Positions 13,305 through 41,999 of a DNA stretch of 64,000 nucleotides are shown piece after piece. Within the stretch, counting starts at the first letter, position 1, and each line of letters begins with the position of its first letter. Under the pieces are notes generated by a model. That model ran no database searches. It worked only from the letters and a program-made list of their open reading frames with translations, and was not told where the DNA came from. The stretch lies in the IMG/VR virus record IMGVR_UViG_3300023199_000204, positions 186,001 to 250,000 of that record. One strand, written 5' to 3'. The position numbers and the translations under genes are program-made.

Positions 13305-14268
13305 ATGATTAAAAATATATATTCATTTATTTTTGGGTCAGCTATTGGCTCAACTATCTATTATATTTTAACAAAAAATATTTATGTATCTATAATAGGG
13401 TTTTCTATAGTATCTATAATTGGAATACTTATTTATTCTATGGAGAATAAAGATGAAGTTCCCTAATGCCGATATGGTCTGGAAGAATCATATACTAATT
13501 TCGAGCTTTGAGCAACTAAATAAAGAGCTAATGAGATTTAGTAAAAAATTATGTGAAGAAAACTTTAGAAAATTTCCAAGAGAGTATGGAAAAGCACAAG
13601 GTTATTCTTGTTCTGCTTTTGAAATAAAATCACTTTTAGAAAATATAGAGGAAATATTTAAAAATGATTCCTAAAATTGGTGATAAGGTAAAAATAACTC
13701 CTGATGGGTGGAGAGAAATTAAAAACTGGGTCCCATTTGACAGTATAAATAATATTGATAGAAGGGTAGTTTATACAATTATTAATATAAAAAAACATTA
13801 TTCAAGAATTAAGTTTAATATTAAAGATCTATCGGGAAAATTTGTTCACTTTGAACGGACCATACCTACTTCTCAATTTGGTGTGTTTATGAGTGGCAAA
13901 GTTCCAGTAATATTATTTAAGCCGGTAAACAAAATGAATAATAATTCAGAAGTAAAAAATTGTTTAATGTGTGGTTCTCCTGTACATCTTGGATTTAATC
14001 TTTTTCACTGTAGTAATATTGATTGTGTAAACTATGATGAAAATTTTTATGATAGTTCAGATTACGAAGGCGGTGAAAAACCACATGAGTTTGTATTTTA
14101 ATTATGAAGTATAATCAAAGACTTATATGGTTTATACTTGATAATTCGATTAAAAATGGAAAGATAAAAGGATATCTTGAAAAAATGTATCTTCGTGATC
14201 AGCTTGAATATAAATCAACCGAAGAACTCGAAGAAATGGCACAAGAATTTAATAGAGGGCAACAACAC

Positions 14269-14310
14269 ACGCGTGCGTGAATTTTGTTTTTTTTGTCTCG
14301 ACGATTTTAC
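14269..14310. repeat. Dispersed 42-nt motif, copy 1
   Basis: acgcgtgcgtgaattttgttttttttgtctcgacgattttac, near-identical to 22609 and 41958. Its TGA is the stop of small ORF 14104..14280. Confidence 0.9.
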
Positions 14311-14622
14311 ACTCCAAAAAATGAGGACGGACTTTTCACCTTTTTAAAAGGAGGTTATTATGAATACCAAAAGTATTTTAATAGAAATTATTAATGAGAT
14401 TAATATTCAATTATCAAGTCTTTCTAATTTAAAAAATATATATGAAGCAACATCTCAAAAAGAAGAAGTTAAGAAAATTTCTTATACTATTCAAGAGTTA
14501 AATTTAACAAGGAATAATATATATAAAAAACTTCAATCTATTTATGATCTTGAAGATGTTCTTAACATAAAGATGTGGCAAAAACTAAATCCTAATAGAG
14601 CACAGGCATAAGGGAGAATAAA

Positions 14623-15060
14623 ATGAATAATGAATCAAAATCTTCATTTGAGGGAAGCACTTTTGCTAATAATAATGTTTTGGCAAAAACATTTCGCAAA
14701 ATGCTTAACACTCTTAACGATTACGAATTGAATCTAATTCTAAAAGAAGCTCACGATATAGAAAAAATAAGAATTCAAAGGAAGATTAATAAGGGAAGCT
14801 ACGAGCTTTTGAGCGGAGATGAACTAGAACTCCTTTCAAAAGGTAGGATTTGGGAATCGATAAGAAGATACAAAAATAGAACCAAATGTAATAAGAAATT
14901 CGCAAGAGAAGTAATTAATTTTCATAGTTCAATAGAACGAAAGATTGTTTCAGAATCAGTTTCTGAAGTTCTAAAAGAAGATTATGTAGCCAAGCCTTTG
15001 AAAAACTTCAAGAGAGTATATGATGTTGATCTTGAAGGTCCTCAGCTTCCAACAAGTTAA
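14623..15060 (+). CDS. Hypothetical protein, possibly with a ribosomal L7/L12 C-terminal-like helical motif
   Basis: GRIWESIRRYKNRTKCNKKFAREVI loosely resembles the KIxAIKxYRxxTGxxLxEAK pattern. Confidence 0.25.
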   Translation: MNNESKSSFEGSTFANNNVLAKTFRKMLNTLNDYELNLILKEAHDIEKIRIQRKINKGSYELLSGDELELLSKGRIWESIRRYKNRTKCNKKFAREVINFHSSIERKIVSESVSEVLKEDYVAKPLKNFKRVYDVDLEGPQLPTS

Positions 15061-15372
15061 ATGGGAATATTTTTAATTGGCATTGCTGTAGCAGCAATAT
15101 CTTTAACAGTAACCAGATCAGATTTATTTCGTCCATTTAGAAATGATGTTCGTAATGTTAAATTTTTAGGCAAAGTTTTAACTTGTCCTTATTGTTTTTC
15201 ACATTGGATGGCGGCGATACTATCAATATTTTATCAGCCAGAACTTAAAACATATGTGATAATAGAATGGTTTATAGGATTGTTTTGTATAGTAGCAATA
15301 TCAGTTCCAATTATGGCTTTAATAAATTTTTCATTGAACTTTATTCCACCAGAAACTGAGGAAAATTTGTGA
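15061..15372 (+). CDS. DUF1360-like membrane protein
   Basis: Hydrophobic helices with LTCPYCFSHW. Confidence 0.55.
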   Translation: MGIFLIGIAVAAISLTVTRSDLFRPFRNDVRNVKFLGKVLTCPYCFSHWMAAILSIFYQPELKTYVIIEWFIGLFCIVAISVPIMALINFSLNFIPPETEENL

Positions 15373-16002
15373 AACAATATATTTCTCAAATAAAAACGGT
15401 AATAGAAGATATATTTGAAAGTAATAATGAAAATTATATTAACAATACCCTTGGAACTGGTGCGTATTATTATCTGTCGGATGTATCTAACTTAGTTGAA
15501 GGTCTAGAAGAGGAAGCAGATATAGCTGAACTTAAAATAAAACTTTTCAATAATGAAAAAGAAATTTTTCTTCCTTAAAGAAAGTTAGATAAACGTTATA
15601 TATTAGAAGAGGCAATGAGGAATATTTATAGTATTGTAGAAGAGTGTTCTTATAGACTAATTAAAAGAGGGTGAATAGTGTCTTACTCGACATTTCCATA
15701 TTATATTTTTGGAACAGATAAATATTTAGATGAGTATAAGGTAGGAAAAGTACAATTATAAGGAAATATTGAGCACAAAGTTATAAGTCAGTTTTTGTAG
15801 AATTTATATTTAAACCAGAAGAATTTATTAATTACCTTTTCCTTGGTTTTAAAATAAATAAAAAAAGATATAATCATTATTTAAAAAAGGATTTGAAGAT
15901 GTAAATTCACTTTTAAACAAAAAGGATCTTTGCAAAAATTTAAAAAAGATTAGAAAGCTTTTTAAAAAGATAAAAATTATATATTAATTATTAGGAAAAA
16001 AA

Positions 16003-16653
16003 ATGAACTATGAAAGATATGAAGTAAAAGTATATTCTAATGGAACTAAATATTGGTATAAAGAGGGAAAGCTTCATCGGACCGATGGTCCAGCAATAGA
16101 ATATGCCAATGGAGAGAAACATTGGTATAAAGAGGGAAGTCTTCATCGGACCGATGGTCCAGCAGTAGAATATACTAATGGAAATAAAAAATGGTATCAA
16201 GATGGAAAGCTTCATCGGACCGATGGTCCAGCACTAGAGTATACTGATGGAAATAAAAAATGGTATCAAGATGGAAAGCTTCATCGGACCGATGGTCCAG
16301 CAGTAGAGTATACTGATGGAGAAAAACATTGGTATAAAGATGGAAAGCTTCATCGGACCGATGGTCCAGCAATAGAATATGCTAATGGAACTAAATATTG
16401 GTATCAAGAGGGAAAGCTTCATCGGACCGATGGTCCAGCAGTAGAATATACTAATGGAACTAAAAAATGGTATAAAGATGGAAAGCTTCATCGGACCGAT
16501 GGTCCAGCAAAAGAATATGTTAATGGAGATAAGTTTTGGTATATAAAAGGAAAAGAATATACTGAGAAAGAGTTCAATGAACTCTTGAAAAATGATTGTA
16601 ATGGAAAGACCGTCGAAATCGACGGAAAGAAATACAAACTAATACTTCAGTAA
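16003..16653 (+). CDS. MORN-variant-like 23-aa repeat protein, paralog 2 (7 units)
   Basis: Seven LHRTDGPA units at an exact 69-nt period. Confidence 0.9.
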   Translation: MNYERYEVKVYSNGTKYWYKEGKLHRTDGPAIEYANGEKHWYKEGSLHRTDGPAVEYTNGNKKWYQDGKLHRTDGPALEYTDGNKKWYQDGKLHRTDGPAVEYTDGEKHWYKDGKLHRTDGPAIEYANGTKYWYQEGKLHRTDGPAVEYTNGTKKWYKDGKLHRTDGPAKEYVNGDKFWYIKGKEYTEKEFNELLKNDCNGKTVEIDGKKYKLILQ

Positions 16654-17015
16654 AATAATAATTTGGATAAAATAATGAATGAATATAACTTCTATGTAAA
16701 GATTACGGTTAGAGAACGAGATTTTAGATCAGCATACAGATATATTGCTGAAAGACTTAAGCATTCTAGATTTGAAACACAATCGACTTTCTCTGAAGAT
16801 AAGAAGATTGATGAAACGATTGTAGATGATGTTATTGACAATTGTATGATTTTCGGAGTACCGAATGAGACTTAATTGTTGTGTCTGTGGTGGGCTCGAA
16901 ATAATTTTATTTTTAATTTTTGTCCCCATATATAAAAAGCTTAAAAATAGGCACAAAAAACACCACGAAAAGTGTGAAGACTGTTCTTGTTCTCGCAAAA
17001 TAGAGGAGATAAATA

Positions 17016-17439
17016 ATGAATGAATCTAAAAAAGAAGACATTGTTAAGTTTTTGACAATTTTTTCAGATCAAGAAATGATGAATGTTGCGAGGGGAACAA
17101 ACAAAAGAACAAATTAATATTATGTTCAGTTCTGAACCAAAGTTAGCGTTGCGACTCAATGAAGAAATTGAAAAAGAACTTTTGACTATAAATTAAAGAA
17201 CTCTTGAAAAAAGAGTTAAAATATATGACGAAGCATTTTCTCACGAAGAAATTAAATATATGATAGAATGTTATTCAAGTGAGCTTGGAAAAAGCTTGAA
17301 AGAAAAACTTCCGACAGTTCAAGCAAAATGTGCTAAAATTAATATGAATGCGGGGATGAATTTATTTGATGAAATATATCAAAAAGTTACAGAAGAATTA
17401 GAGCAAGAGAATAACGACGAGAATGTAATCTTAAATTAA
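17016..17439 (+). pseudogene. DUF2059-like protein broken by a G-run frameshift near 17091-17095 and a TAA at 17194
   Basis: The final frame has IYDEAFSHEEIKYMIECYSSELGKSLKEKLP (DUF2059-like). The breaks may be sequencing errors. Confidence 0.5.
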
Positions 17440-18102
17440 AGGATTTAAAATGGATAAGTTTGAGTTGGCAGAGTCAATAAAAAAACTGTATGATAAAGAA
17501 GACTTTGATGTCCAAGAAGCATATGTTATTGCCGACTTGGCAGCAGATCTTGCCGATTTAATTCTTAAAGAAAAAAGTGAAAAAGATGATGACCAAACGA
17601 ACTAGAACGATAAATGTTTCTGCTCATAAATTAGAAGATATTTTTGATATATGTGAAGAGCCTTCGTATCTTCTTGGAAGAATTTGCGGAAGTGAAGAGA
17701 AAAATATTCCTTTGTCCACTATTCTAAATTCATCAGGACTTAATAAAGAATATTTTAATTTATTTACAAATATTACTAATATAAACTTCTCTTTTAAAGA
17801 GATTTGTTTAAAAACGGACTGTATGTGGGACGAAGTATATTATAATCTTAAAAATGAACAAACAATTCTTGAGATTACAGAAGAGCATTTATTTAATATG
17901 TTTAAAAAACATTATTCAAAAAAAGTTGTTGTTGTGGAGTTAATTGATGTTTTAAACAACAATGAAATAGTAGAAGTTTGTAATTACGTTGGATGTAATA
18001 AGGAAAAAGAATACGAACTTGAAAAAAAAATAGAGAAAATGTCTTGGAAAAGAATAGCAAAATTTGCTATGGATGTGCTTCAACTTAAACTTGGAAAGAA
18101 GA

Positions 18103-18513
18103 ATGAATAGAAATGAAAGGCTTCTTATGAGAGCCTTTAATAAAAGTATAGAATCAAATCATCCAATATTTCCTATGGGAGCAATTCTTGCTCAGGGAAA
18201 TAGAATAATCTCTTATGGAACCAACAAGCACGGCTGTACTCATCCAAAACAAAAGGTGAGAACAAATAGCCTTGGAATGGAATATGGAAGGCATTTTCCT
18301 CACGCAGAACTAATATGTTTACTCGCCGCTCCAAAGAATAAGAGAATAGGATCAACAATCTATGTTGCTCGCAGATTAAATAAGGGAGGAACTGGAATGG
18401 CAAAGCCTTGTCAACATTGTCATACCTACCTTCTTAACGAAGGTGTCAAAAAAGTAGTTTATACGGTTAAATCAGAAGACTTCACTAATTGGTATAATGA
18501 TTATTACCTCTGA
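18103..18513 (+). CDS. Zn-dependent cytidine/dCMP deaminase-fold protein
   Basis: HAE (HAELICL) and PCxxC (KPCQHC) motifs. Confidence 0.8.
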   Translation: MNRNERLLMRAFNKSIESNHPIFPMGAILAQGNRIISYGTNKHGCTHPKQKVRTNSLGMEYGRHFPHAELICLLAAPKNKRIGSTIYVARRLNKGGTGMAKPCQHCHTYLLNEGVKKVVYTVKSEDFTNWYNDYYL

Positions 18514-20623: not shown

Positions 20624-22608
20624 ATAAGTAGGAGCTTAAAATGAATAAACCCTTTGAAAATTTTTGTAAAAAACATTTTGTCAGCAGTAATGGTAGTGTC
20701 CAGAAACTTAGTTCTAATAATAAAGAAGCAAAAGAAAGAAAAAAAAAGATCGCTATTAAAAAGGTTAGAAGTTCTGAAAGAAAACTAATTGCCGCTCTTA
20801 AAAGAAAAGAATTAGAGCTACTTAAAATAAACAAAAAAGAAAGTAAAGAAGAATATGAATCTATCTTTAATAATATTAAAGAAATAAATCAAAAACTAAA
20901 TAATGTAAGAAAACAACTAACAACGATGTATTTAAATAAAAATAAAGTATGAAATATTATACAGACATTGATATAATAAGAGGTGAGTTTGAATATTCAG
21001 TAGATGTAGAAATTAATCTTTATAAAGACTATGCCAAAATAGTTAATTCAAAAATTTCTTGTTATTTATATGATGGAGAAGAAATAACTGATTTTATTGG
21101 ACCACCAGAAAGGGAACAAGTTCCTATAAATGCTTGGATAAAGCTTAATAATTATGAAGAAGAAAGAGTGATTGAAGAGGCATTAAATGAATTATGTTAA
21201 GTTATTGTTGTTAAGTTTATTTATATTTTCTTGTGGAGGCATAAGAACTCCAATGGATAAATATTGTAAGAGAGAGTGTTTATCTATTTATGATGAAGTT
21301 GAAACAGCTTATTGGTTAGGTAATGATAACATTTTAAATAAAACTAGATGTGGATGTGTTGTAAATGGCAAAGAAGAAACAGAGTTCTTACCCCAAAGAA
21401 AACCTAATAACTGAAAGCTGGTTATTAAATGAACTTACTTCATATGAAGCTGAGATAATAAATCTTTTAGAGCCTCCAAGGAATCATATAGATTCCAAGG
21501 ATCCGTATGACAAAGCAAAGTCTCAAAGACTTCTTGCTATGAGAAGCATACATTTAAAGGCTAGATTTCCCAATGGCAGAGTATTTTGGGCACAGGCTGG
21601 GACAGTATGTAACTCAACACCTAAAGATAGTGTAGAAGAGTTTGAGTCAATTGAAGTGGCTTATATGGAAGAAGGAGAGCCCAAACCATTAAAAAAACTA
21701 ATTGATGTCGGCTTAGGAGAGAAAAAGAAATCATTAATTAAAAACTGTAATAAAAAAAACTTAGAAGCAATGTTAATGATAATCGCTTCCTTAAAAAAGA
21801 AAAAGAAAAAAGAGAAATGGTGATGTTTTTTGTTCTATCAGAAAACAAAAATATAATTATTGTGGAAGCTCTTTTTAAGAAAAAAGAAAAAGCAGAAGAG
21901 TATAGAAATTTAATGAATAATATGTATCCATCAATTAATCATTGGGTAGAAGATTTTAAAGGAGATGAGAATGAACAATCGTAATGAAGCTAATCAGGCA
22001 TTAAAAGAAATGGAAGAAAGCACTAAGAAAGGAAATAGTGCTTCAGGTCGCTTAAATAAAATTGGTGATAAAAGTTTAGCAGAAAAGGTAAAAAAAGTTT
22101 CAAACGATATGGATGAGTGTGTTAAAGAAATTAAAAGGAAACTTAATAAAGACAATAATTAAATATGACAAAAGAAGAAATTGAAATTATAATAAAAAAC
22201 TTCATTAAAGATGAAGATCTACAAAAAATAATTTTAAAATACATATCAAATTGCAAAAACAAAGAAAAAATTAAAGATTGTGTATCTAGTAATATTAACA
22301 ATCTTATTTCAACATTAATCAGTTTAACACTTGCTATTATTATGGAGAATGAAGAATGTCTAGAGGAAATCACAGAACAAGAGCAAGATTTAAAGAAAGA
22401 AAAGAACAAAGAAGGAAGGAAGCTTTAAAGAGACAAGAATGTAGAGATAAATTAACTCCAGAGCAACAACTAGATAGGCTTAATTCTTTGCTTGGCGAAG
22501 GAATTGGTGCTCAAAAAGAAAGGGACAAGTTGCGTAGAAAGATAGAAGAAAACAAAGAATAACATTCGTTTTATATAAGGTGTTGAGATTTAAGGAAGTA
22601 TCCAACGT

Positions 22609-22650
22609 ACGCGTGCGTGAGTTTTGATTTTTTTGTCTCGACGATTTTAC
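22609..22650. repeat. Dispersed 42-nt motif, copy 2
   Basis: acgcgtgcgtgagttttgatttttttgtctcgacgattttac, with 2 mismatches to copy 1. Confidence 0.9.
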
Positions 22651-23264
22651 TTTTCGATGAAAATTAGGGAGGTGAACTAGATTATTAAATAATGGGATTA
22701 AAAGGGAGAAATAGTTCTAAGTTTTATTAATTAATTTAAAGGAGAAAGAAATGGAAGAAACTCAAACTAATACTAATACCGATACTGAAAACAAAAAGAA
22801 AACGGACCCCGCTGTCCAGCGACTTCGTAAGATCTCTCGTTGCGTTCAGACTTTGCTTCAGGTTGAAGGTGAAGAAATTACCTCAAAACAAGTAATGGAG
22901 CTTCTAGCTGATAAAGATCTAAGCGATAATGTAGACCCTGTTGCTTTGAAGGAAGAGGTTAAGGCTCAGATTCCTAATCTACCTCAACCGGCTCAGATCT
23001 CAACTAGTAGCGAGCGTCGTGAAGCCCTTGAAACCTATATGTCATCTCATTGGGACGATGTAAAGGATAACGAGGTTGTTAGATCAGCTCTATTTAATGC
23101 TTATTGTCAGGGTCGCTACTCGAAGGAGCATCGGGAAGGAATGAAATCTGAGCTGCTTGCTCGCCTCAATGGTGATGCTCCTGACAGCTCAACAGTTAGT
23201 TCAGGTGATGACACATCTGATGCCCCTAGTGATGGAAAAGATCTAGACTTTTAATCCTAATTTA

Positions 23265-23369: not shown

Positions 23370-23390
23370 TTATAGAAGAAAGGAATATAA

Positions 23391-23906
23391 ATGAATAGGT
23401 ACTTTATTGATACGGAGTTTATTGAAAGTGGAAAATGTATTGAACCACTAAGTATTTGCCTTATTAAAGAAAATAAAAAAACAGGGAAGGTTGAAGATAA
23501 ATATTACGCAATAAATATTGATTGCGATATATCTATCACAAACGACTGGGTAAAAGAAAATGTTTTAAAACATCTTCCAAAAGTATCTTCTCCATTATAT
23601 AAAAGTAAAGAAAAAATAGCTGGAGATTTAATTAGCTTTACAAAAGAAGATAATTTATTTGAGATGTGGGGATGGTTTCCTACATATGACTGGGTAGTTA
23701 TAAAAAATATATTCGGTAGCATATATTCTTTACCTAATAATTTTCCAAATAAAATATATTGTTTAAGACAGTGGCTATATCATTTAGGATTAAGATTTAA
23801 TATTCTTCCAAAAAAAGATAAATCAAAAGTTCATAGTGCTGAGTATGATGCTGAATGGGCACGAAGAACATTTAGAATTCTTAATAAAATAGAAGGAACT
23901 AAATGA
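23391..23906 (+). CDS. DEDDh 3'-5' exonuclease (RNase AS-like)
   Basis: FIDTEFIE, YDWV and HSAEYDA motifs. Confidence 0.8.
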   Translation: MNRYFIDTEFIESGKCIEPLSICLIKENKKTGKVEDKYYAINIDCDISITNDWVKENVLKHLPKVSSPLYKSKEKIAGDLISFTKEDNLFEMWGWFPTYDWVVIKNIFGSIYSLPNNFPNKIYCLRQWLYHLGLRFNILPKKDKSKVHSAEYDAEWARRTFRILNKIEGTK

Positions 23907-24617: not shown

Positions 24618-25481
24618 ATGTCTATAAGAACAAAGCCAATAAAGAACTTAATTGATCCAAGCACAGCAAATAGAATTGTTAATCAAATTATATATGAAGA
24701 AGTTGTAAGATATAATTTAGAATATAAAAAATATCTTTCTGGGAAAAGAAAGAAACCATTGAGTTGGGCATCTAATGCGTCCAATAGATTAAAAGATTAT
24801 AATATTGAACTATCTCATACAACTTTAAATAGTTATAAGAAAGCAATTTCTAATGGAAAAAGAGATGCTACTTCTGCTGCCAGTTTTGGTGGGAAAACTA
24901 TTTCGTCTCGATATGGAAAAGATAGAATGTATGGTCAGTTTGATATGTTAATAAATTTAAATCTAAAAAATACGCGATTAAAATATGTTGGGTTGCCTGC
25001 TAATCAGATAATATCTGTTGTTAATAAATATAAAAATGTAATTGCTTGTGATAAAGATGCTAGCATGTATGCTTTTATGCAAAACCAATTAGATGTATTT
25101 AAACCCAATGGAAAAGTAATAGTATATTTAGATGATGTTTTAGAATTTTTAGAAGAAACAAATAACAAGTTTTCTATTTTTGATTTAGATTTAATGTGCT
25201 TTTTGGATGACGAAAACTTTATTAGAAGGATAGCTAGAGCCGTTGCTAGGTCTTCATTAAAAAGCTCAGTAGTTTGTATAGCGAGCTGTATAGGCAGGAA
25301 GGCGAATTTTACAGAATTTTCTTATAGGAAGTTAATGCCAAAGGTTTTTTTAAAAGAACTGGCTAAGAGTAATTTTATAGTATCGACACAATACTCTGGT
25401 GGATATACAGATAAAATTATACCTATGAGATATGAATTATTTGTTTTAAATAAAATATCGGACGCCGTTCTTTGTTCATAA
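24618..25481 (+). CDS. Possible class I SAM-dependent methyltransferase-like protein
   Basis: C-terminal half has Rossmann-like spacing: YVGLPA, IACDKD, DDVLEFL, IFDLDLM. Confidence 0.3.
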   Translation: MSIRTKPIKNLIDPSTANRIVNQIIYEEVVRYNLEYKKYLSGKRKKPLSWASNASNRLKDYNIELSHTTLNSYKKAISNGKRDATSAASFGGKTISSRYGKDRMYGQFDMLINLNLKNTRLKYVGLPANQIISVVNKYKNVIACDKDASMYAFMQNQLDVFKPNGKVIVYLDDVLEFLEETNNKFSIFDLDLMCFLDDENFIRRIARAVARSSLKSSVVCIASCIGRKANFTEFSYRKLMPKVFLKELAKSNFIVSTQYSGGYTDKIIPMRYELFVLNKISDAVLCS

Positions 25482-25508
25482 TATTTAATTTTAAATGGTA
25501 GGCTAAAA

Positions 25509-25958
25509 ATGAATTACGAAAAATATGAAGTAAGAGTATATACTGATGGAGATAAATATTGGTATAAAGAGGGAAAGCTTCATCGGACCGATGGTCCAGC
25601 AATAGAATATGCCAATGGAGAGAAACATTGGTATAAAGAGGGAAGTCTTCATCGGACCGATGGTCCAGCAGTAGAATATATTAATGGAAATAAAAAATGG
25701 TATAAAGAGGGAAGGCTTCATCGGACCGATGGTCCAGCAATAGAATATGCTGATGGAACTAAAGAGTGGTATAAAGAGGGAAAGCTTCATCGGACCGATG
25801 GTCCAGCAATAGAATATTCTGATGGAGATAAAGAATGGTATATAAAAGGGAAAATATATACTGAGAAAGATTTCAACGACCTCTTGAAAGATAATTGTAA
25901 TGGAAAGACCGTCGAAATTGACGGAAAGAAGTACAAGCTTATTCTTATGGAAGATTAA
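25509..25958 (+). CDS. MORN-variant-like 23-aa repeat protein, paralog 3 (4 units)
   Basis: Four LHRTDGPA units. Units 1-2 are almost identical in DNA to units 1-2 of paralog 2. Confidence 0.9.
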   Translation: MNYEKYEVRVYTDGDKYWYKEGKLHRTDGPAIEYANGEKHWYKEGSLHRTDGPAVEYINGNKKWYKEGRLHRTDGPAIEYADGTKEWYKEGKLHRTDGPAIEYSDGDKEWYIKGKIYTEKDFNDLLKDNCNGKTVEIDGKKYKLILMED

Positions 25959-25959
25959 A

Positions 25960-26487
25960 ATGAATATAGATGTGGAATTTTTAGAAAGAGCTAAATGGTT
26001 TGCTACTATAATTCATCACGGCCAGCAATATGGTAATAAACCATATATTCATCATCTTGAACAGGTAGAATGTGTAATTTCAAGGTTTAATTTTGATGAC
26101 TTAGAATTAAGAGTAGCGGCTTGGCTTCACGATAGTATTGAAGATGTTGAAGGCATTGATTATAAAAAAATAAAACTAGGATTTGGAACAGAAATTGCTG
26201 ATATAGTTTTTTGCGTTACTAATCAGATAGGTAGAGATAGAAAAGAAAAATTTAAATATACTTATCCTAAAATAAAAGAAAATAGAAAGGCATTAATTGT
26301 TAAATTAGCAGACAGAATTGCTAATATTGAAAATGGAATGGGATATAGGACAGGGTATGTTAATATGTATAAAAAAGAATGGCCTGAATTCTATGAAGCT
26401 CTTTATGATAAAGAAGAAACTGATGAGCGTGTAATTAAAATGTGGAACTATCTTAAATCTTTATTTGAAGAATTTAAAAATGGATAA
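25960..26487 (+). CDS. Stand-alone RelA/SpoT-type HD hydrolase (Mesh1/SAH-like)
   Basis: HHGQQYGNKPYIHHL, AAWLHDSIED and VKLADRIAN. Confidence 0.8.
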   Translation: MNIDVEFLERAKWFATIIHHGQQYGNKPYIHHLEQVECVISRFNFDDLELRVAAWLHDSIEDVEGIDYKKIKLGFGTEIADIVFCVTNQIGRDRKEKFKYTYPKIKENRKALIVKLADRIANIENGMGYRTGYVNMYKKEWPEFYEALYDKEETDERVIKMWNYLKSLFEEFKNG

Positions 26488-29754: not shown

Positions 29755-29843
29755 TGAGTTTCTAATTGGAAACTTTCCAAAAACCTATATGATTGGACTA
29801 CAATTAGCACAAATTTCATATGAATTATTCGAAAGGATTGGGA

Positions 29844-30497
29844 ATGAAAGAAGTCGTATATACAAAAAATATCATCCTCGAAAAATTAAAGGAAGCGATA
29901 GAGAATAAAGATACTCATTTTATACTGCCAAGTGGAAACTCTGTTAAAGTTTCTAGAGCACACAAAACGTTCTATTTTAGTGGCACAGAATGTGTCGGTT
30001 GTGGTTTAGATGCCCAGGTGTTTATAGAGTATCCAATAGAAGAGTTTGAAGGAAGGGCAAGGCTTAATTTATTTGCTTATAAAAACAAGCAAATGGTCCT
30101 AATGACTTCAGATCATATAATTCCAGCATCAAAAGGAGGAGCTAGCAGAATATCTAATCTTCAAACTATGTGTATTAAATGTAATGGAATGAAGAAAAAC
30201 AATATTAAAGAGCAAATCATTGAAAAAGCTTTATATCCTTTCAAGAGTGTTAAAGATTTCATTCTCTCTAACAATGAAGACAATGACAATTCCATTAAAT
30301 TAATAAAAGAAATAGATATTTTGGTTTTTTCTCATCAAGAAAAATTAAATACAACGGGACCAATTTACTCTTCATATAAAAATATGAAATATTATTTAAA
30401 ATATCTTGAGAAAAAATATGGAGTTTCAGTTCCAATAGAAGAGTTAAAAATTGTTCCCTCAAATAAAGAGAGGGAAGCATACAAAATAAAAGTGTAG
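29844..30497 (+). CDS. HNH endonuclease, paralog of 10972
   Basis: CVGCG, then MTSDHIIPASKGG...NLQTMCIKCNGMK. Confidence 0.85.
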   Translation: MKEVVYTKNIILEKLKEAIENKDTHFILPSGNSVKVSRAHKTFYFSGTECVGCGLDAQVFIEYPIEEFEGRARLNLFAYKNKQMVLMTSDHIIPASKGGASRISNLQTMCIKCNGMKKNNIKEQIIEKALYPFKSVKDFILSNNEDNDNSIKLIKEIDILVFSHQEKLNTTGPIYSSYKNMKYYLKYLEKKYGVSVPIEELKIVPSNKEREAYKIKV

Positions 30498-33130: not shown

Positions 33131-33294
33131 AATAATATTAATAGTAGTTTCAGCACTATTTATTACACTCAATTTAATATCAGCATTTAACTGTCCAGAG
33201 AACACAGAGTGCTCTTCAGGTTTTCATCTAGTGTTCGCCGCTGCCTGGACGGGTATACTAGTAATAAGTATAATTTCACTTCGCAGGGAATCAA

Positions 33295-36447: not shown

Positions 36448-36517
36448 TGTTTTTAGGTTCCATCTAGATGCCCAATTATAATTTAGGTGGAACTTATAAA
36501 AGATTAAATGTGTAATT

Positions 36518-37693
36518 ATGGAATTTGAAATAAACGACAGACTATTATTTCTGACGATTCACGGAAGTCACGCTTATGGAATGGCTAGACCTGAAAGTGA
36601 TATTGATATTAAAGGCTTAGGTGTTGCCCCTAGAAATTATTATTATTCTTTCTTTAAAAATTTTGAACAATATGAAGGAGAACTTTCTTTAAGGGATGAG
36701 TGTAAGCAACGACTTGAAGCGACAATTGGTCGTAGTATTAAATCAAATGAAAAGTTAGACTCGGTTATATACAATATTACTAAGTTTTTTAAATTAGCAT
36801 CTCAATGTAATCCAAACATTATTGAGGTATTGTTTGTTGATGATGAATCAATTCTATATTCTCATAAGATTATGGAAATGATTATAAATAATAGAGATTT
36901 ATTTCTATCTATGAAGGCGAACTTTAGGTTTCGTGGGTATGCTTTTTCTCAACTTAAAAGGATAAAACGTCATAGGCGTTGGTTATTAAATCCTATAGAA
37001 AGCAACCCAACTAGAGAAGATTATGGATTGCCACAAAGAACTGTTATGCCTGCGGACCAACTACAAGCAGCAGAATCTCTCATTCAAAAGAAAGTAGATG
37101 AATGGATTTTTGAACAGGAAGATATGACTCCAGAGCTTCTTAGTCTTGTAAGAAAAAGAACTATTAAATCTTTTAAAGAAGCTTTTACAGGTCTTGGTAT
37201 AAATAATATTACTGATGAATATGAAGATCTCAATAAGGCAAAACTTTCAAGAGGTGCGGGGAAGCTCCTAGGATATAGTGATAATTTTCTCGATCTTTTA
37301 GATAGCGAGCGAAGATATAAAGCACCAAAAACTGAATATAAACAATATAAAAGCTGGCAAAAGAATAGAAATCCTGTTAGAGCAGAGATGGAAGCTGAGT
37401 CAGGATTTGATCGAAAGCACGCTAGCCACCTTGTAAGGCTTATGAAAATGGCTAAAGAGATTTTATCAGAGGGAAAGGTAATAGTTAAAAGACCAGATGC
37501 TGAGGAGCTTCTTGGAATTAGAAATGGTTCAATGTCTTATGAAGAAGTTGTTAAGTGGGCAGAATTTCAAGACGGAGCAATTCAGGAAATATATGATAGT
37601 GGCTCTTCTCCTCTACCAAAAAAGCCAGATCTAAATAAGATAGATAAATTACACAAAGAAGTATTAGAAGCTGTATTTAAAGAATTTGACTAA
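36518..37693 (+). CDS. Predicted nucleotidyltransferase (RlaP/PF10127-like)
   Basis: IHGSHAYGMARPESDIDIKG, NPNIIE and KHASHLVRL. Confidence 0.8.
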   Translation: MEFEINDRLLFLTIHGSHAYGMARPESDIDIKGLGVAPRNYYYSFFKNFEQYEGELSLRDECKQRLEATIGRSIKSNEKLDSVIYNITKFFKLASQCNPNIIEVLFVDDESILYSHKIMEMIINNRDLFLSMKANFRFRGYAFSQLKRIKRHRRWLLNPIESNPTREDYGLPQRTVMPADQLQAAESLIQKKVDEWIFEQEDMTPELLSLVRKRTIKSFKEAFTGLGINNITDEYEDLNKAKLSRGAGKLLGYSDNFLDLLDSERRYKAPKTEYKQYKSWQKNRNPVRAEMEAESGFDRKHASHLVRLMKMAKEILSEGKVIVKRPDAEELLGIRNGSMSYEEVVKWAEFQDGAIQEIYDSGSSPLPKKPDLNKIDKLHKEVLEAVFKEFD

Positions 37694-37980
37694 ATGTTTG
37701 AAATAACAAAGAAAGCTGTTAAAAAAGCTTTTCAAATAGGACAAATTTTATTTTCAATGGGTCCTGGAGATTTTAATAATCTAGTAGAACTAACTAGTAA
37801 TATAAAATTTCCTAGTGAAAGGCAAATTAAAATGGCTATGAAATCAGGTGCTGATAGGCAAGTTGCGATAGCAGGACTGATAGAAGATCAATACATTAAT
37901 ATCGCGACTAGAAATGGATATTCTAGCGAACAAGGAAAAGCTATGTTTGAATATGTTGCTATGCTTGAGGATATGAAGTA

Positions 37981-38286
37981 ATGGCAATTATTACTTCAGC
38001 TATTTTAATTATATTAAATATCTTTGATGTAGTATGTACTTTATATATGAGGTTATCTAAAGGTTTAGAAGAAATGAATCCCATTGTAGATTTTTTTCTC
38101 CAGAATTTTGGATGGGCTGGGCTAGTTTTATTGAAAGTTTTAGCAGTAGCTCCATTTGTATATTTAATGATTAAGTACTGGAAAACATTTAGAATAATTA
38201 GAGTTAGCTCATACTTCGTGACTCTAGTATATTTTTTACTTGCTATTTACCACATTATAGGTATGTATATGATTAGTAATATCTGA
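37981..38286 (+). CDS. DUF5658-like membrane protein
   Basis: LNIFDVVCT...GLEEMNP followed by TM helices. Confidence 0.55.
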   Translation: MAIITSAILIILNIFDVVCTLYMRLSKGLEEMNPIVDFFLQNFGWAGLVLLKVLAVAPFVYLMIKYWKTFRIIRVSSYFVTLVYFLLAIYHIIGMYMISNI

Positions 38287-38310
38287 AAAACAAGGAATCT
38301 TTATTTATAA

Positions 38311-39627
38311 ATGAAAAAGAATGACTTTAATTTTTCAGCCTATGTTGAAGAAAAAGAAGCATATTCTGAAAAACAAAAAAAATATCTTAGAAGAAAAAAA
38401 GCAGTAGGTGTTATCAAAAAAATAACATCTGTTGCCAGAGAGGCATTAGACATATATAGTTCTATTAAAAGAAAAGATTATATTTCTATAGGATTGGGAA
38501 CACTTTCTGCTACTGGCTCTATATTAGAGCACTTTTCTACGAATCAAGTTAGTGATGATGTTTATTTGGTTACCAAGGAAATGGGATTAGAAAAGGGTCC
38601 TCAAAATTCTAAAATGCTAATATATTCTTTCCTAAAGGATATGAATGTTCCATACAAAGTTATATGGAAAGAAATCACTAAAGATGATGGGGGCGAACCT
38701 TGTAGCATAGAAGAGTGGGATTTAGGAGATAGTTCTGTATATTTTCTAAAATTTACATCATATCTTGATGGGCCTTTCTTAAAGGATAGAAAGCAATTTA
38801 ATGTAGATATGGGAAAGGTTATTAGAGCTAATCTAGGAAGACATATTTGTATTGAGTCTGGAATTAATATAGCTGACTATGCGAATAAGGTTTCATTTTC
38901 AAAGATTTCACTGTCTTTTTTAGGTGATCCATATGTAAGTCATTTAGATCAAAAGCAATTAATAGACGATATTAAACTTTTTTTCGATAAGTCATACAAT
39001 AGGTCATTATTATTCTATGGTCCTCCTGGTTCTGGGAAGACCACATTAGCTTTAAGAATATCTAATACCTTAAATGAAAGTATTTTATCTATTAAAGGAG
39101 GGATCCTTATTTCCAGGAGTGCTGGTGAATTAATTGAAATAATAGATATGATAGATCCAACAATAATATTATTTGATGACATGGATAAAATTCCAAGGCT
39201 TGAGCAAATACTGGGAACTATTGAGGAATTTAATAATTATCGTGGCGATAGAAGCAGGTTATTTATTGCTACTATAAATGATTTAAGTAAAGTTCCTATG
39301 GCTATGAGAAGACCTGGTAGATTTGATCAGATAATTTCTTTTGGTTGCCCTGAAATAGAAACTAGATTAAAAATGGTTGAAGAGTATGCTAAATCTAAAA
39401 ATCTTATTCTTTCGGCAGAACAAATTTTAGAAACGGCTACATTGCTTGAAGGAATGACGGGAGCCTTTATTAAAGATATTATTACAAGGATCTCTGTATT
39501 AGGATATGAGAAGGTCGTACCTAATCATATTAATGAAATAAAAAATATTGTGTTTGAAGAAGAAGATTTATACGAAGAAGAGGAAGACCTTATTGTTACT
39601 GATAGTCCTAAATCTTCTTTATATTAA
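38311..39627 (+). CDS. AAA+ ATPase
   Basis: Walker A GPPGSGKT, Walker B ILFDDMD, SRH ATIN...RRPGRFD. Confidence 0.85.
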   Translation: MKKNDFNFSAYVEEKEAYSEKQKKYLRRKKAVGVIKKITSVAREALDIYSSIKRKDYISIGLGTLSATGSILEHFSTNQVSDDVYLVTKEMGLEKGPQNSKMLIYSFLKDMNVPYKVIWKEITKDDGGEPCSIEEWDLGDSSVYFLKFTSYLDGPFLKDRKQFNVDMGKVIRANLGRHICIESGINIADYANKVSFSKISLSFLGDPYVSHLDQKQLIDDIKLFFDKSYNRSLLFYGPPGSGKTTLALRISNTLNESILSIKGGILISRSAGELIEIIDMIDPTIILFDDMDKIPRLEQILGTIEEFNNYRGDRSRLFIATINDLSKVPMAMRRPGRFDQIISFGCPEIETRLKMVEEYAKSKNLILSAEQILETATLLEGMTGAFIKDIITRISVLGYEKVVPNHINEIKNIVFEEEDLYEEEEDLIVTDSPKSSLY

Positions 39628-39635
39628 TAAGAGAG

Positions 39636-41954
39636 GTGCTGATGGAAAAAATACAACTTCCGGTTCTTCCAATTAGAAGTCCCGATTTTCTTTTATTCCC
39701 TTGTTCTTTTGGGGATATTTATGTAGGAAGAGAATTTTCAATAGAAGCTCTAGCGTCTGCTAGAGCTAATAAAATTAATTTACTACTTGCTTTTCAAAAA
39801 GACCCTATAATTGACGAGCCAGAAATTGATGATTTACATAACATATGTGTTGAAGCAGAAATAAAAGACATTGTTAAAAACTCAACTGGTCCCGCCAGAG
39901 TTGTTTTAAGTGGTATAAAAAGAGCAGTACTTAAAGATTATTATCTTAGTGAAGGTAATTTTTATGTAGCCGATATAAAATATGTAAAGGAACCAAACTT
40001 TGAGCTAACTGATGATGATAAAGAAAAAATAAAAGTGCTTAGAGAAATTATAAGTACTTATTTTAAATCAGTAGTCATTAAAGTTAATGAAGTAAACTCT
40101 TCTGAAGATTTATCAAACTATGTAGATAATATATGTGGTCAATTATATAAGATATTTAGAACTAATAAAATACTTTTAAAACTTTTAAAAACTAAGCATC
40201 CTAGAAAAAGATTAGAAGGTTTGTTCGACATAATATCAAAAGAATCAAAATATAAAGAAGTTTCTTTTGATATGGAAAATGATTCTGAAATGGACGATGA
40301 CCATCCAGCAATAACAGATATTAAAAAGTTACATGACCAAGCGGCAGCAACCGAATTTCCTGAAGAAGTAGCAAAAGTTGTTGGGAGAGAACTTAAAAGA
40401 ATAAGAATGCTTCCACCAGGGAATGCTGAATTCCAAGTTACATATTCTTACTTAGATACTTTAATTGCTCTTCCTTGGAACAAATATACTGAAGATAAAC
40501 TAGATATAGAAGTTGCTAAAGATATATTAAATAGAGATCATTATGGAATGATAAAAGCCAAGGAAAGAATTTTAGAATTTTTGGCAGTTAAAAAATTAGT
40601 TTCTGAAAAGAAAGGTTCTATTCTCTGTTTCTGTGGTCCTCCCGGCGTAGGTAAAACTAGTATTGCCAGAAGTATAGCAGAAGCCGTTGGTAGAAAGTTT
40701 ATTAGGATGTCACTTGGTGGAATTAGTGACGAGGCAGAAATAAGAGGTCATAGAAAAACTTATATAGGGTCTATGGTTGGTAAGATAATGCAGCAGATTA
40801 AGAGAGTAGGAGTTAAGAACCCTGTATTTTTATTGGATGAGATTGATAAGATAAGCAAGAATTTTAAAGGAGACCCTGCGGCAGCATTATTAGAAGTATT
40901 AGATCCGGAACAGAATTCTACATTCGTAGATAATTATTTAGGCGTGCCTTTTGATTTATCACGAGTGATGTTCCTAGCAACTGCTAATGACATAAGTATG
41001 TTAGTCCCTGCTTTAAGAGATAGGTTGGAGATAATTGAAATATCTGGTTATTCAATTTTTGATAAAATAAAAATCGCTCAAAACTATTTACTTCCAAAAC
41101 AGCAAAAAGAAAATGGGCTTAAAGATTATGACATAACTGTTTCAGCAAAAGCGATAGAAAAAGTAATAGAAGAGTATACAAGAGAATCTGGGGTTCGTTC
41201 TTTAGAGAGAACTTGTGGAGCAATTATGAGAAAAATTGCTGTGATGGTTGCTTCAGGTAAAGATCCATATTCAATGATTAAAGCGGATATGATTCCTAAT
41301 CTACTAGGACCTCCAAAGGAATATTCAGAAAAGGCTGCCGAAAGACCAGAGATTGGGTTGTCAACTGGGCTAGCTTGGTCTGAAACAGGTGGTTCCATTT
41401 TATTTGTAGAGTGTTCTCTTAGTAATGGGAAAGGAAAAGTAATCTTAACAGGAAATTTAGGAAAAGTTATACAAGAATCAGCACAAGCTGCTTATACTTA
41501 TATAAAATCAAATTCAGAATCTCTTGGGATTGACACATCTTTAGTTGAAAACAGAGATGTTCATATTCACTTTCCAGCGGGAGCGATTCCAAAAGACGGT
41601 CCTAGTGCGGGAGTTGCTTTAGTTTCAGCAATGCTTTCTTGTTTCTTATTAAAGCCTGTTAGAAATGATATAGCAATGACTGGAGAGATAAGTTTAAGAG
41701 GAAGAGTTATGCCAATAGGTGGTTTAAGAGAGAAGGTTTTGGCAGCAGACCGAGCAGGAATAAGCACTGTATTATATCCCAAATTAAATAAATATGATTT
41801 GGAGGAAATTCCTGAAGATGTAAGGAAAAAGATGAAATTAATACAGATTTATCATATATCAGAAGCTATTGATTTGCTGTTAGTAGATGGGCAGGGGAAT
41901 GATAATAATGAATTGTCTTTACCAAGTACCCCAGTTGTTAATAGAAGTATCTAA
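39636..41954 (+). CDS. lon: ATP-dependent Lon protease
   Basis: Lon N-domain, GPPGVGKT, LLDEIDK, catalytic PKDGPSAG and IGGLREK. Confidence 0.95.
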   Translation: MLMEKIQLPVLPIRSPDFLLFPCSFGDIYVGREFSIEALASARANKINLLLAFQKDPIIDEPEIDDLHNICVEAEIKDIVKNSTGPARVVLSGIKRAVLKDYYLSEGNFYVADIKYVKEPNFELTDDDKEKIKVLREIISTYFKSVVIKVNEVNSSEDLSNYVDNICGQLYKIFRTNKILLKLLKTKHPRKRLEGLFDIISKESKYKEVSFDMENDSEMDDDHPAITDIKKLHDQAAATEFPEEVAKVVGRELKRIRMLPPGNAEFQVTYSYLDTLIALPWNKYTEDKLDIEVAKDILNRDHYGMIKAKERILEFLAVKKLVSEKKGSILCFCGPPGVGKTSIARSIAEAVGRKFIRMSLGGISDEAEIRGHRKTYIGSMVGKIMQQIKRVGVKNPVFLLDEIDKISKNFKGDPAAALLEVLDPEQNSTFVDNYLGVPFDLSRVMFLATANDISMLVPALRDRLEIIEISGYSIFDKIKIAQNYLLPKQQKENGLKDYDITVSAKAIEKVIEEYTRESGVRSLERTCGAIMRKIAVMVASGKDPYSMIKADMIPNLLGPPKEYSEKAAERPEIGLSTGLAWSETGGSILFVECSLSNGKGKVILTGNLGKVIQESAQAAYTYIKSNSESLGIDTSLVENRDVHIHFPAGAIPKDGPSAGVALVSAMLSCFLLKPVRNDIAMTGEISLRGRVMPIGGLREKVLAADRAGISTVLYPKLNKYDLEEIPEDVRKKMKLIQIYHISEAIDLLLVDGQGNDNNELSLPSTPVVNRSI

Positions 41955-41999
41955 CGCACGCGTGCGTGAGTTTTGATTTTTTTTGTCTCGACGATTTTA
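41954..41999. repeat. Dispersed 42-nt motif, copy 3, with perfect 14-bp palindrome ACGCACGCGTGCGT
   Basis: Begins at the last base of the lon stop codon: acgcacgcgtgcgtgagttttgattttttttgtctcgacgatttta. Confidence 0.9.

What the first reader, a model, noticed from the sequence alone, without database searches (positions are those of the whole stretch)
14265..41999. Unexplained 42-nt CpG-rich motif repeated three times at or just after gene ends
Seen at 14269, 22609 and 41958: ACGCGTGCGTGA(A/G)TTTTG(A)T7-8GTCTCGACGATTTTA, about 95 percent identical. The left end is a 14-bp palindrome (ACGCACGCGTGCGT, perfect in copy 3, one mismatch in the others), followed by a T-tract spacer and a second CG-rich box. 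All copies have the same orientation, are 8 and 19 kb apart, and have unrelated flanks. One supplies an ORF stop codon and one starts on the lon stop. It does not match sigma70 promoters, terminators or CRISPR repeats. Inference: a phage-specific cis element, such as a promoter for a phage RNA polymerase, an operator, a replication/packaging/partition site, or a recombination site bounding gene modules.
Basis: partly seen in the sequence, partly recalled or inferred. Interest (0 to 1): 0.72.

Follow-up and report, generated by a model that had tools for sequence, protein, structure and literature searches.

The report
Five-copy intergenic promoter-like motif, huge phage
A sharply conserved 42-base signal sits between genes five times in one uncultivated giant phage genome and most likely marks where a special class of transcripts starts, which is interesting for that phage but an ordinary kind of feature.

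Summary
The motif is at window 14269, 22609 and 41958, far beyond chance. The window is part of a 316,473-bp, 32% GC viral contig with essentially all genes on the + strand. That contig holds two more, diverged copies outside the window (genome 254839 and 291995). All five copies are on the + strand and intergenic. Each begins at or just after an upstream stop codon and ends 12-101 nt before the next start codon.

The two diverged copies show what is constrained: CGTGCGTGA, then 17 (once 18) T-rich bases, then TCGACGATTTTA. Both boxes are invariant and the spacer is free. The 14-bp palindrome is not conserved.

There are no half sites or weak members, no shared hairpin and no Rfam match. Contigs from two samples span copy 3 without differences, so that copy is not an assembly artefact.

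My best reading (about 0.45) is a specialised two-box promoter with sigma-70-family geometry: box A near -35, box B across -10, and the start near the final A. In copy 5 the ribosome-binding site begins one base after the motif.

No transcript data were available. No phage RNA polymerase gene was found, only one phage sigma factor. Rivals are a regulator site, a nick, recombination or origin site, and a terminator.

Novelty is modest: a new member of phage-specific regulatory motifs.

The parts
14265..14309 (+). Copy 1. Alternating purine/pyrimidine run 14265-14279; box A CGTGCGTGA 14272-14280; T-rich spacer 14281-14297 (17 nt); box B TCGACGATTTTA 14298-14309.
22605..22649 (+). Copy 2. Alternating run 22605-22619; box A 22612-22620; spacer 22621-22637 (17 nt); box B 22638-22649.
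41954..41999 (+). Copy 3. Alternating run and perfect 14-bp palindrome starting at 41954; box A 41961-41969; spacer 41970-41987 (18 nt); box B 41988-41999.
   Evidence: Spanned without differences by contigs of two samples.
14104..14280 (+). 58-aa ORF upstream of copy 1. Its TGA stop is the last three bases of box A. No family match.
14360..14611 (+). First gene after copy 1 (83 aa, no family). Its GGAGG ribosome-binding site lies upstream of the ATG, which is 50 nt after the motif. The next genes are 145 aa and 103 aa (DUF1360).
22751..23254 (+). First gene after copy 2 (167 aa, no family), 101 nt after the motif. The next gene, 23391-23906, is an RNase H-like / Rv2179c-like exonuclease.
39636..41954 (+). 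Lon protease (LonA, 772 aa) ending immediately before copy 3.
   Evidence: TIGR00763, 770.8 bits
42065..42256 (+). First gene after copy 3: a 63-aa protein with CxxC pairs that look like a zinc ribbon (read from the sequence, no family match). It also follows lon in relatives L133, L211 and L213. The next genes are 69 aa and a 462-aa GHKL-type ATPase (42434-43822).

Best explanation
The motif is a specialised promoter, or a promoter fused to its activator site. It marks a small class of five transcription starts in the accessory-gene half of a giant phage genome.

Proposed geometry, which is inferred and not shown: box A (CGTGCGTGA) occupies the -35 region, roughly -38 to -30. A 17-18 bp T-rich spacer follows. 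The 5' part of box B (TCGACG, or GACGAT two bases further on) serves as the -10 element. Transcription starts at or within about 3 nt of the final A of ...GATTTTA.

Host RNA polymerase would be directed there by an alternative sigma factor or a phage-encoded specificity factor. The only phage candidate seen is the 213-aa sigma at genome 135122-135763, and it is not linked to the motif by any test.

Genes are co-directional and canonical terminators are rare. Each start could therefore feed a long polycistronic transcript.

Copies 1-3 are nearly identical, including spacer and some flank. This suggests that the element has recently been copied or homogenised by recombination between copies, as happens with promoter cassettes in T4-type phages.
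For: Shown:
- There are five copies, all on the coding strand and all intergenic. With about 13% of the contig intergenic, five of five by chance is about 4e-5.
- Each copy lies upstream of a gene with a Shine-Dalgarno site, 12-101 nt before the ATG.
- Conservation is two-box. Both boxes are invariant in all five copies, while the spacer differs at 5 to 7 of its 17 positions in the diverged copies (5 in copy 4, 7 in copy 5) yet keeps its length of 17 (once 18). This is the spacing of sigma-70-family promoters.
- In copy 5 the GGGAG ribosome-binding site begins one base after the motif and the ATG is 12 nt after it. There is no room for another promoter there, so any start must lie inside or at the end of the motif.
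- There is no shared RNA structure. Folding z-scores are +1.7, +1.8, -1.9, 0.0 and -0.2, and the consensus fold is -1.6 kcal/mol with no covariation. There is no Rfam match.
- The flanking genes are unrelated, so the repeat is not a by-product of gene duplication.
- It is the top intergenic repeat of the genome.
- In relatives L133 and L211, the orthologous gap between lon and the 63-aa gene carries a different conserved 13-mer, CGCTTATGATTTG, with a TATGAT -10-like core. I estimate a chance match at about 6e-5. That gap therefore seems to be a conserved regulatory position, occupied here by the motif.
- Only about ten canonical terminators were found in 316 kb.
- A phage sigma factor exists.
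Against: - There is no transcript evidence: no RNA run was listed.
- The boxes match the housekeeping consensus poorly, about 6 of 12 in the best register, and the scan did not report them.
- The phage sigma has an RpoD-like region 4.2 by NCBIfam domain matches; the inference that it would prefer TTGACA-like -35 elements rather than CGTGCGTGA rests on my reading of the recognition helix from memory.
- Sigma-dependent promoter classes usually show a graded series of weaker sites. This family is all-or-none: the five copies score 40.8 and the next best site 14.9. That pattern fits a highly specific DNA-binding protein, nickase or recombinase at least as well.
- No phage RNA polymerase was found.
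- The motif is not detectably conserved in relatives beyond what shuffles give.
- One relative (L213) has only 22 nt between lon and the next gene.
Confidence: 0.45

Rival explanations
1. The motif is an operator or activator site. A sequence-specific phage or host DNA-binding protein recognises box A and box B. It represses, activates or insulates transcription that starts elsewhere or reads through from upstream.
For: - The 21 box positions are invariant and there are no degenerate members. The two boxes never occur alone.
- Each box is a short internal repeat, CGTG-CGTG and CGA-CGA (read from the sequence).
- Copy 3 is followed by a perfect TATAAT about 25 nt downstream (read), which could be the real promoter there.
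Against: - The boxes are not similar to each other or symmetric, unlike typical dimer operators.
- Copy 5 leaves no room for a separate promoter between the motif and the ribosome-binding site.
- No candidate binding protein was identified. The only complex prediction attempted was not folded and is not evidence.
Confidence: 0.2
2. The motif is a DNA-level site: a strand-specific nick as in T5, phiKMV-like phages and tf; a recombination site that shuffles gene cassettes; or a transcription-primed replication origin.
For: - The copies are few, discrete and on one strand only, as at localised nick sites. Those are described in PMC3517423: 5 major nicks in T5, 14 in tf, all in one strand.
- Copies 1-3 are about 95% identical including spacer and some flank. 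Copies 2 and 3 align over 56 nt, reaching into the lon 3' end, which implies recent copying or gene conversion.
- The contig is rich in homing endonucleases and inteins, and an HNH gene directly follows copy 4.
- Box A with its upstream flank is a 15-16 nt alternating purine/pyrimidine run in all five copies. Only 8 such runs of at least 14 nt exist in the genome. Such tracts are Z-DNA-prone and recombinogenic (general knowledge).
Against: - All genes are on one strand, so the strand bias says little.
- The strict intergenic placement and the fixed position upstream of ribosome-binding sites point to gene expression.
- Known nick consensus sequences are 7-19 nt rather than 42 nt and two-box (PMC3517423).
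- No indel bounded by copies could be tested.
- The evidence for selection on the alternation is weak. All 6 or more substitutions there are transitions, but 7 of 11 in the spacer are too, giving p about 0.07.
Confidence: 0.17
3. The motif is a transcription terminator or attenuator for the upstream gene, with or without an adjoining promoter, like the stem-loop half of a PeSL cassette.
For: - Including the alternating run, the element starts 0-3 nt from the upstream stop codon in three copies (3, 4, 5), and box A contains the stop codon itself in copy 1.
- Copy 3 has a 5-bp GC stem followed by a T-rich tail and passes the terminator-like filter.
- The spacer is T-rich in all copies.
Against: - The hairpin is not conserved. 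It is absent in copies 4 and 5 and carries a mismatch in copies 1 and 2.
- Folding energies are no better than shuffles in four of five copies.
- The T-tract is degraded in copy 5.
- The best-conserved part, box B, lies downstream of the T-tract, where a terminator needs nothing.
- Real terminators elsewhere in this genome have 7-12 bp stems.
Confidence: 0.08
4. The motif is a chance repeat or an assembly, adapter or chimera artefact.
For: The record is a metagenome-assembled contig. Only copy 3 was checked against other assemblies.
Against: - 0 of 100 shuffles give three matches.
- Copies differ from each other at a few bases and have unique flanks with ORFs running up to them.
- An 8,786-nt contig from the probable source run, and a 1,648-nt contig from a second sample, cross copy 3 with no differences.
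Confidence: 0.01

Closest known systems
Phage-specific promoter classes read by host RNA polymerase with a phage sigma or appropriator (SPO1 gp28 and gp33-34 promoters, T4 MotA-dependent middle promoters)
   Same: - Sharply conserved, non-housekeeping sequence blocks at -35-like and -10-like spacing.
- Found only in the phage genome, on the coding strand, just upstream of genes.
- A phage sigma gene is present.
   Different: - Only five copies, all-or-none, with 21 invariant positions.
- No tested link to the phage sigma, which has an RpoD-like region 4.2.
- The sequence matches no consensus that I could recall. Those consensus sequences come from memory and were not tested here.
PeSL cassettes of T4-type phages (PMC2839356, PMC4122927)
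   Same: - Repeated intergenic regulatory cassettes in the accessory, variable part of a large phage genome.
- Often placed just upstream of genes with no known family.
- Near-identical copies that can act as recombination substrates.
[quoted passage not shown]
   Different: - PeSLs carry a consensus sigma-70 promoter plus a stable stem-loop, and number about 50 per genome.
- Here neither a consensus promoter nor a conserved stem-loop is present.
- There are only 5 copies, and recombination between them was not shown.
T7-type single-subunit RNA polymerase promoters
   Same: - Very high conservation of about 20 bp running up to the start site.
- An AT-rich stretch followed by a specific core (TTTTGTCTCGACGATTTTA), in few copies.
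- Long co-directional transcription units.
   Different: - No cognate polymerase gene on the contig. PF00940 gives only a 12.8-bit match, E = 0.006.
- A second invariant box lies 17 bp upstream, which T7-type promoters lack.
Localised single-strand interruption (nick) sites of T5, phiKMV-like phages and tf (PMC3517423)
   Same: A handful of discrete consensus sites, all on one strand, with no tolerated variants.
   Different: - Nick consensus sequences are short single blocks and are not tied to intergenic positions.
- Nicking cannot be assessed from assembled contigs.

Membership tests
Housekeeping sigma-70/sigma-A promoter | TTGACA and TATAAT hexamers, at least about 9 of 12 matches, 16-18 bp apart | tested here: not met
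   The consensus scan reports no site in the motif. The best register by eye, GTGAAT-17-GACGAT, matches 6 of 12, although it keeps A at -11 and T at -7.
Sigma-70-family promoter (any sigma) | Two conserved blocks separated by a spacer of fixed length (about 17 +/- 1 bp) but free sequence, upstream of a gene on the coding strand | tested here: met
   Box A, N17 (N18 in copy 3), box B in all five copies; spacer diverged in copies 4 and 5. All copies lie upstream of genes on the + strand.
Sigma-70-family promoter (any sigma) | A transcript 5' end about 7 nt downstream of the -10 block | not testable with these tools
   No RNA run was listed.
Intrinsic (rho-independent) terminator | A stable GC-rich hairpin immediately followed by a U-tract, conserved among copies | tested here: not met
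   Only copy 3 passes, with a 5-bp stem. There is no shared fold and the energies are not below shuffles.
PeSL promoter/stem-loop cassette | A consensus sigma-70 early promoter plus an adjacent stable stem-loop | tested here: not met
   definition from PMC2839356
PeSL promoter/stem-loop cassette | Copies flank cassettes of genes with no known family, and recombination between copies creates indels | tested here: inconclusive
   The copies precede small genes without family matches. Copies 2 and 3 share extended homology. No indel or mini-circle could be examined.
T7-type single-subunit RNA polymerase promoter | A cognate single-subunit RNA polymerase encoded by the phage | tested here: not met
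   PF00940 gives only a sub-threshold match, 12.8 bits. The contig is incomplete (CheckV 18%), so absence from the whole phage is not shown.
Localised nick site | A strand-specific interruption of virion DNA at the consensus | not testable with these tools
   Only assembler contigs were available.
CRISPR repeat | Tandem array of repeats separated by spacers of about 25-75 nt | tested here: not met
   The copies are 8.3, 19.3, 26.9 and 37.2 kb apart.
Known RNA family (Rfam 15) | A covariance-model match | tested here: not met
   The only gathering-threshold hit in the window is a tRNA at 332-413. A permissive scan of all five loci finds nothing at the motif.

The most novel reading that the evidence does not exclude
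The five elements are not plain promoters but supercoil-sensitive or DNA-transaction sites. In each, a Z-DNA-prone alternating purine/pyrimidine tract, a T-tract and an invariant box together mark one of two things. They could be strand-specific nicks or recombination points that shuffle accessory-gene cassettes. Or they could be transcription-primed replication origins, like the handful of promoter-based origins of T4. Either would be a feature not yet described for giant phages.
Probability: 0.12. Interest if true: 0.7.

Novelty: new member of a known kind. Interest (0 to 1): 0.4.

Why it matters
Giant phages known only from metagenomes have almost no mapped regulatory signals. A discrete five-member element with two invariant boxes gives a concrete handle on how one of them organises expression of its accessory genes: the lon-adjacent genes, the ubiquitin-like E2/JAB/ThiF module, a ribosomal L7/L12 homologue and tRNAs.

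If it is a promoter, it defines a specificity that some factor must read. That could be the phage sigma, a host alternative sigma or an unknown protein, and it could be found by pull-down. If the copies also serve as recombination substrates, they would help explain how variable cassettes are exchanged after lon in this phage lineage.

Phage-specific promoter motifs are common, so the finding is useful rather than surprising.

Tried and rejected
- **Exact two-box pattern in IMG/VR:** 0 hits.
- **Box B alone in IMG/VR:** 113 or more single chance hits, none with box A upstream.
- **Two-box pattern in JGI metagenomes:** one hit, inside a coding region of an unrelated higher-GC contig.
- **Two-box pattern in 185,579 species genomes:** 0 hits for the full boxes. 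The relaxed pattern gave 97 scattered single hits, mostly in high-GC genomes, so no host regulon signal emerged.
- **Megablast of 5 kb against GenBank phages:** no match.
- **Close relatives via Lon:** none by the direct search.
- **Distant relatives:** found via the 462-aa ATPase and Lon. They are 39-58% identical in full-length alignments, and up to 67% over the aligned half of Lon in the intein-bearing relative L211. Their intergenic regions do not carry the motif.
- **Apparent resemblances in relatives:** L133 has CGTGCGCGTGATTTTCG at the lon stop, and L211 has the repeat AAATTTGTTTSGATATTTT. Neither exceeds what shuffles give. I do not count them as evidence, although the best box-A-like matches in L133 do fall within 80 nt of the lon stop.
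- **Dyad and k-mer searches of intergenic regions:** no abundant promoter consensus.
- **Sigma paralogues:** none by phmmer. The weak Sigma70_r4 matches are ordinary helix-turn-helix proteins or homing endonucleases.
- **Sigma-DNA complex prediction:** not folded, so it is no evidence either way.
- **RNA runs:** none listed.
- **Considered from memory and set aside, because the sequences did not fit on inspection:** integron attC, lambda nut, parS, IHF, Spo0A, LexA, CIRCE and CtsR boxes, and the sigma-D, -F, -G, -H, -K, -I, sigma-54 and ECF consensus sequences. These were not formal tests.
- **PurZ idea for the gene upstream of copy 4:** rejected. The gene is far closer to PurA (E = 1.7e-51) than to PurZ (E = 1e-15 to 2e-10).
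Full report
**1. Observation**

I searched each half with up to three mismatches. Each search finds exactly these three sites, all on the + strand. Shuffles give 0.01 and 0.12 matches, and none of 100 shuffles gives three.

The window is bases 186001-250000 of a 316,473-bp IMG/VR virus record. The record has 32% G+C and strong CpG depletion (observed/expected 0.63). Practically every gene is on the + strand.

Searching the whole record finds two more copies outside the window, at genome 254839 and 291995. These are more diverged. A weight-matrix scan with variable spacing scores the five copies at 40.8. The next best site in either strand scores 14.9. Neither box ever occurs without the other. 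The family is therefore discrete, with five members and no half sites or weak relatives.

In an all-against-all comparison of intergenic regions, it is the strongest repeat of the genome.

**2. Anatomy**

Aligning the five copies shows what is constrained.
- Box A is CGTGCGTGA, invariant.
- The spacer is 17 nt, or 18 in copy 3. It is T-rich but free in sequence: copy 4 differs from copy 2 at 5 of its 17 positions and copy 5 at 7.
- Box B is TCGACGATTTTA, invariant.

It is absent from copies 4 and 5, so it is not the conserved feature.

What all five share upstream of box A is an unbroken alternation of purine and pyrimidine over 15-16 nt. Only eight such runs of 14 nt or more exist in the whole genome, and five of them are these. 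I treat this as a description rather than proof of selection. All six or more substitutions in that stretch are transitions, but so are 7 of 11 in the spacer, which gives p of about 0.07.

Copies 1-3 are about 95% identical, including the spacer. Copies 2 and 3 align over 56 nt at 94.6% identity, which reaches into the last codons of lon. This points to recent copying or homogenisation among these three copies. Copies 4 and 5 are older.

**3. Context**

All five copies are intergenic.
- Including the alternating run, the element begins 0-3 nt after the upstream stop codon in copies 3, 4 and 5.
- It contains the stop codon itself in copy 1 (the TGA of box A).
- It lies 42 nt after the stop in copy 2.
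- It ends 50, 101, 65, 61 and 12 nt before the next ATG in copies 1-5. Each of those ATGs has a Shine-Dalgarno sequence.

About 13% of the contig is intergenic. Five of five intergenic placements by chance is therefore about 4e-5.

The flanking proteins are unrelated to each other.
- Upstream are a 58-aa ORF, a 68-aa ORF, Lon, a short PurA-like adenylosuccinate synthetase and a 94-aa ORF.
- Downstream are small proteins without family, two small cysteine-rich proteins that look like zinc ribbons, an HNH endonuclease (copy 4), and further on an RNase H-like exonuclease, a GHKL-type ATPase, an E2/JAB/ThiF module, a ribosomal L7/L12 homologue and tRNAs.

The copies all lie in the 200-292 kb part of the contig, which is made of small accessory genes. 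Structural genes occupy about 5-90 kb. A block of large nucleotide-metabolism and sporulation-related genes (ribonucleotide reductase, PrkA, SpoVR) and the sigma factor lie at about 117-139 kb.

**4. What it is not**

- It is not an assembly artefact, at least for copy 3. An 8,786-nt contig from the probable source run crosses it with no differences. So does a 1,648-nt contig from a second sample.
- It is not a structured RNA or a conserved intrinsic terminator. The five copies share no hairpin, and their folding energies are no better than shuffles (z = +1.7, +1.8, -1.9, 0.0, -0.2). The consensus fold is -1.6 kcal/mol with no covariation. Only copy 3 passes a lenient terminator filter. Genuine terminators elsewhere in the genome have stems of 7-12 bp, and only about ten were found.
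- It matches no Rfam family.
- It is not a CRISPR repeat, because the copies are 8-37 kb apart.
- It is not a housekeeping promoter by the consensus scan.

**5. How it most likely works**

The pattern is two invariant blocks, a spacer of fixed length and free sequence, on the coding strand directly upstream of ribosome-binding sites. This is the signature of a promoter of the sigma-70 family type.

Copy 5 constrains the geometry. Its GGGAG ribosome-binding site starts one base after the motif and its ATG is 12 nt after it. If the element drives that gene, the start must lie at or within a few bases of the final A.

Counting back from there:
- The 5' half of box B falls at -12 to -7. This is TCGACG, or GACGAT two bases further on, which keeps A at -11 and T at -7.
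- Box A falls at about -38 to -30.
- The spacer between them is the canonical 17 bp.

This geometry is inferred, and no transcript data exist.

The contig encodes one clear sigma-70-family factor (213 aa, genome 135122-135763). It has no paralogue. I found no single-subunit or multisubunit RNA polymerase. Transcription therefore presumably relies on host polymerase.

Nothing links this sigma to the motif. Its region 4.2 is RpoD-like, which argues for TTGACA-like -35 elements instead. The reader of the motif may be a host alternative sigma or an unidentified phage factor. The contig is rated only 18% complete and may lack the relevant gene.

**6. Comparative evidence**

No other sequence in IMG/VR, JGI metagenomes or 185,579 species genomes carries the two boxes together. 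The exceptions are chance matches inside unrelated genes.

Relatives were found through the ATPase and Lon proteins. They are 39-58% identical in full-length alignments, and up to 67% over the aligned half of Lon in the intein-bearing relative L211. They share the order AAA ATPase, Lon, small genes, GHKL ATPase, E2/JAB/ThiF, NAPRTase, ribosomal protein S21.

In L133, L211 and L213 the gene after lon is the orthologue of the 63-aa gene after copy 3. That intergenic gap is therefore orthologous.
- L133 and L211 share an exact 13-mer there, CGCTTATGATTTG, with a TATGAT core. I estimate chance at about 6e-5. It is a plausible conserved promoter.
- Our genome has the 42-nt motif at that place instead.
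- L213 has only 22 nt there.

This supports the idea that the position is regulatory. It does not show that the motif itself is conserved. The resemblances I first saw in L133 and L211 do not exceed what shuffles give.

**7. Rivals**

The all-or-none distribution and the 21 invariant positions are more typical of a highly specific DNA-binding protein, nickase or recombinase than of a sigma factor.
- A regulator site is therefore a serious alternative (about 0.2).
- A DNA-level site is another (about 0.17). This could be a localised nick as in T5, phiKMV-like phages and tf (PMC3517423), a recombination point, or a transcription-primed origin.
- The near identity of copies 1-3 and the abundance of homing endonucleases and inteins fit a mobile or recombining cassette. 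PeSLs of T4-type phages are the closest described analogue (PMC2839356, PMC4122927). The defining PeSL parts, a consensus sigma-70 promoter and a stable stem-loop, are not present here.
- A terminator reading is weak (about 0.08).

**8. Verdict**

I file the element as a new member of the known kind 'phage-specific promoter or regulatory cassette', with moderate confidence in the promoter mechanism (0.45) and moderate interest (0.4).

The decisive data are 5'-end mapping, reporter or in vitro transcription tests with the phage sigma, and inspection of raw reads for nicks or recombination junctions.

Noticed in passing
whole contig (G000:C1:1-316473), including window 1-64000: Essentially all genes of the 316-kb record lie on the + strand. 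The coding strand is strongly purine-rich (A 37.6%, G 19.2%, C 12.5%). GC skew is positive throughout the window, and I found only about ten canonical terminators.
   Followed up: partly
genome about 158.9-167 kb (L329:2900-11000), outside the window: An island of 45-62% G+C sits in a 31% G+C genome, with few long ORFs. It holds three tRNA genes, a 46-nt internal repeat (159962-160007 and 161534-161579) and a homologue of the DUF7227 gene that follows lon in relatives. It may be a foreign insertion or an assembly chimera.
   Followed up: partly
window 8547-9053, 15895-16677, 25401-25976: Three paralogous genes are built from 69-nt (23-aa) tandem repeats with a MORN-like pattern by eye (no family scan was run) (…GxKxWYKEGKLHRTDGPA…). 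A further copy lies next to the sigma gene.
   Followed up: no
genome 125925-138849 (L230, L231), outside the window: PrkA kinase, SpoVR and a class II ribonucleotide reductase are each interrupted by inteins with LAGLIDADG domains. The phage sigma factor lies between SpoVR and the reductase. This is a set of sporulation-related genes (PrkA, SpoVR); a Bacillota host is suggested by the nearest bacterial Lon homologues, Paenibacillus and Clostridia at 43-46% identity.
   Followed up: partly
genome 253836-254831 (L132:1837-2832), just upstream of copy 4: A short (331-aa) adenylosuccinate synthetase homologue. It is much closer to PurA (E = 1.7e-51) than to the PurZ enzymes of aminoadenine phages (E = 1e-15 to 2e-10).
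   Followed up: yes
genome 292501-292944 and 292969-294161 (L131:3502-5162), after copy 5: A ribosomal protein L7/L12 homologue (C-terminal domain, 1.3e-25) is followed by tRNA genes. Relatives carry ribosomal protein S21.
   Followed up: no
window 38311-47830: A proteostasis and ubiquitin-like block: AAA ATPase, LonA, GHKL-type ATPase, then Prok-E2, JAB and ThiF homologues. It is syntenic in relatives whose G+C ranges from 33% to 59%.
   Followed up: partly
genome 19025, 46436, 82816, 248688 (window 62688), 261957; and genome 103257, 141071: Other small families of intergenic motifs. ATCTATCAAT is followed by TATATTA-like sequence. TACTAATATT…AATATTAGTA forms inverted repeats 20-30 nt apart, which look like operators. 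A 39-nt repeat occurs at genome 30472-30510 and 251468-251506.
   Followed up: no
window 10972-11664 and 29820-30497; genome 254941-255582, 2603-3403 and 4079-5152: Many free-standing homing endonuclease genes (HNH and LAGLIDADG), two of them paralogous with an 84-nt conserved stretch.
   Followed up: no
genome 290242-291239, upstream of copy 5: A C5-cytosine DNA methyltransferase homologue appears to be split into two overlapping ORFs of 173 and 162 aa. It matches a single 318-aa gene in relative L134.
   Followed up: no
L211:8364-8400 and L211:13450-13480 (relative, IMGVR_UViG_3300037067_020703): The closest relative has its own two-copy intergenic repeat, AAATTTGTTTSGATATTTT. One copy lies in the gap after lon. 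It resembles our box B no more than chance allows.
   Followed up: partly
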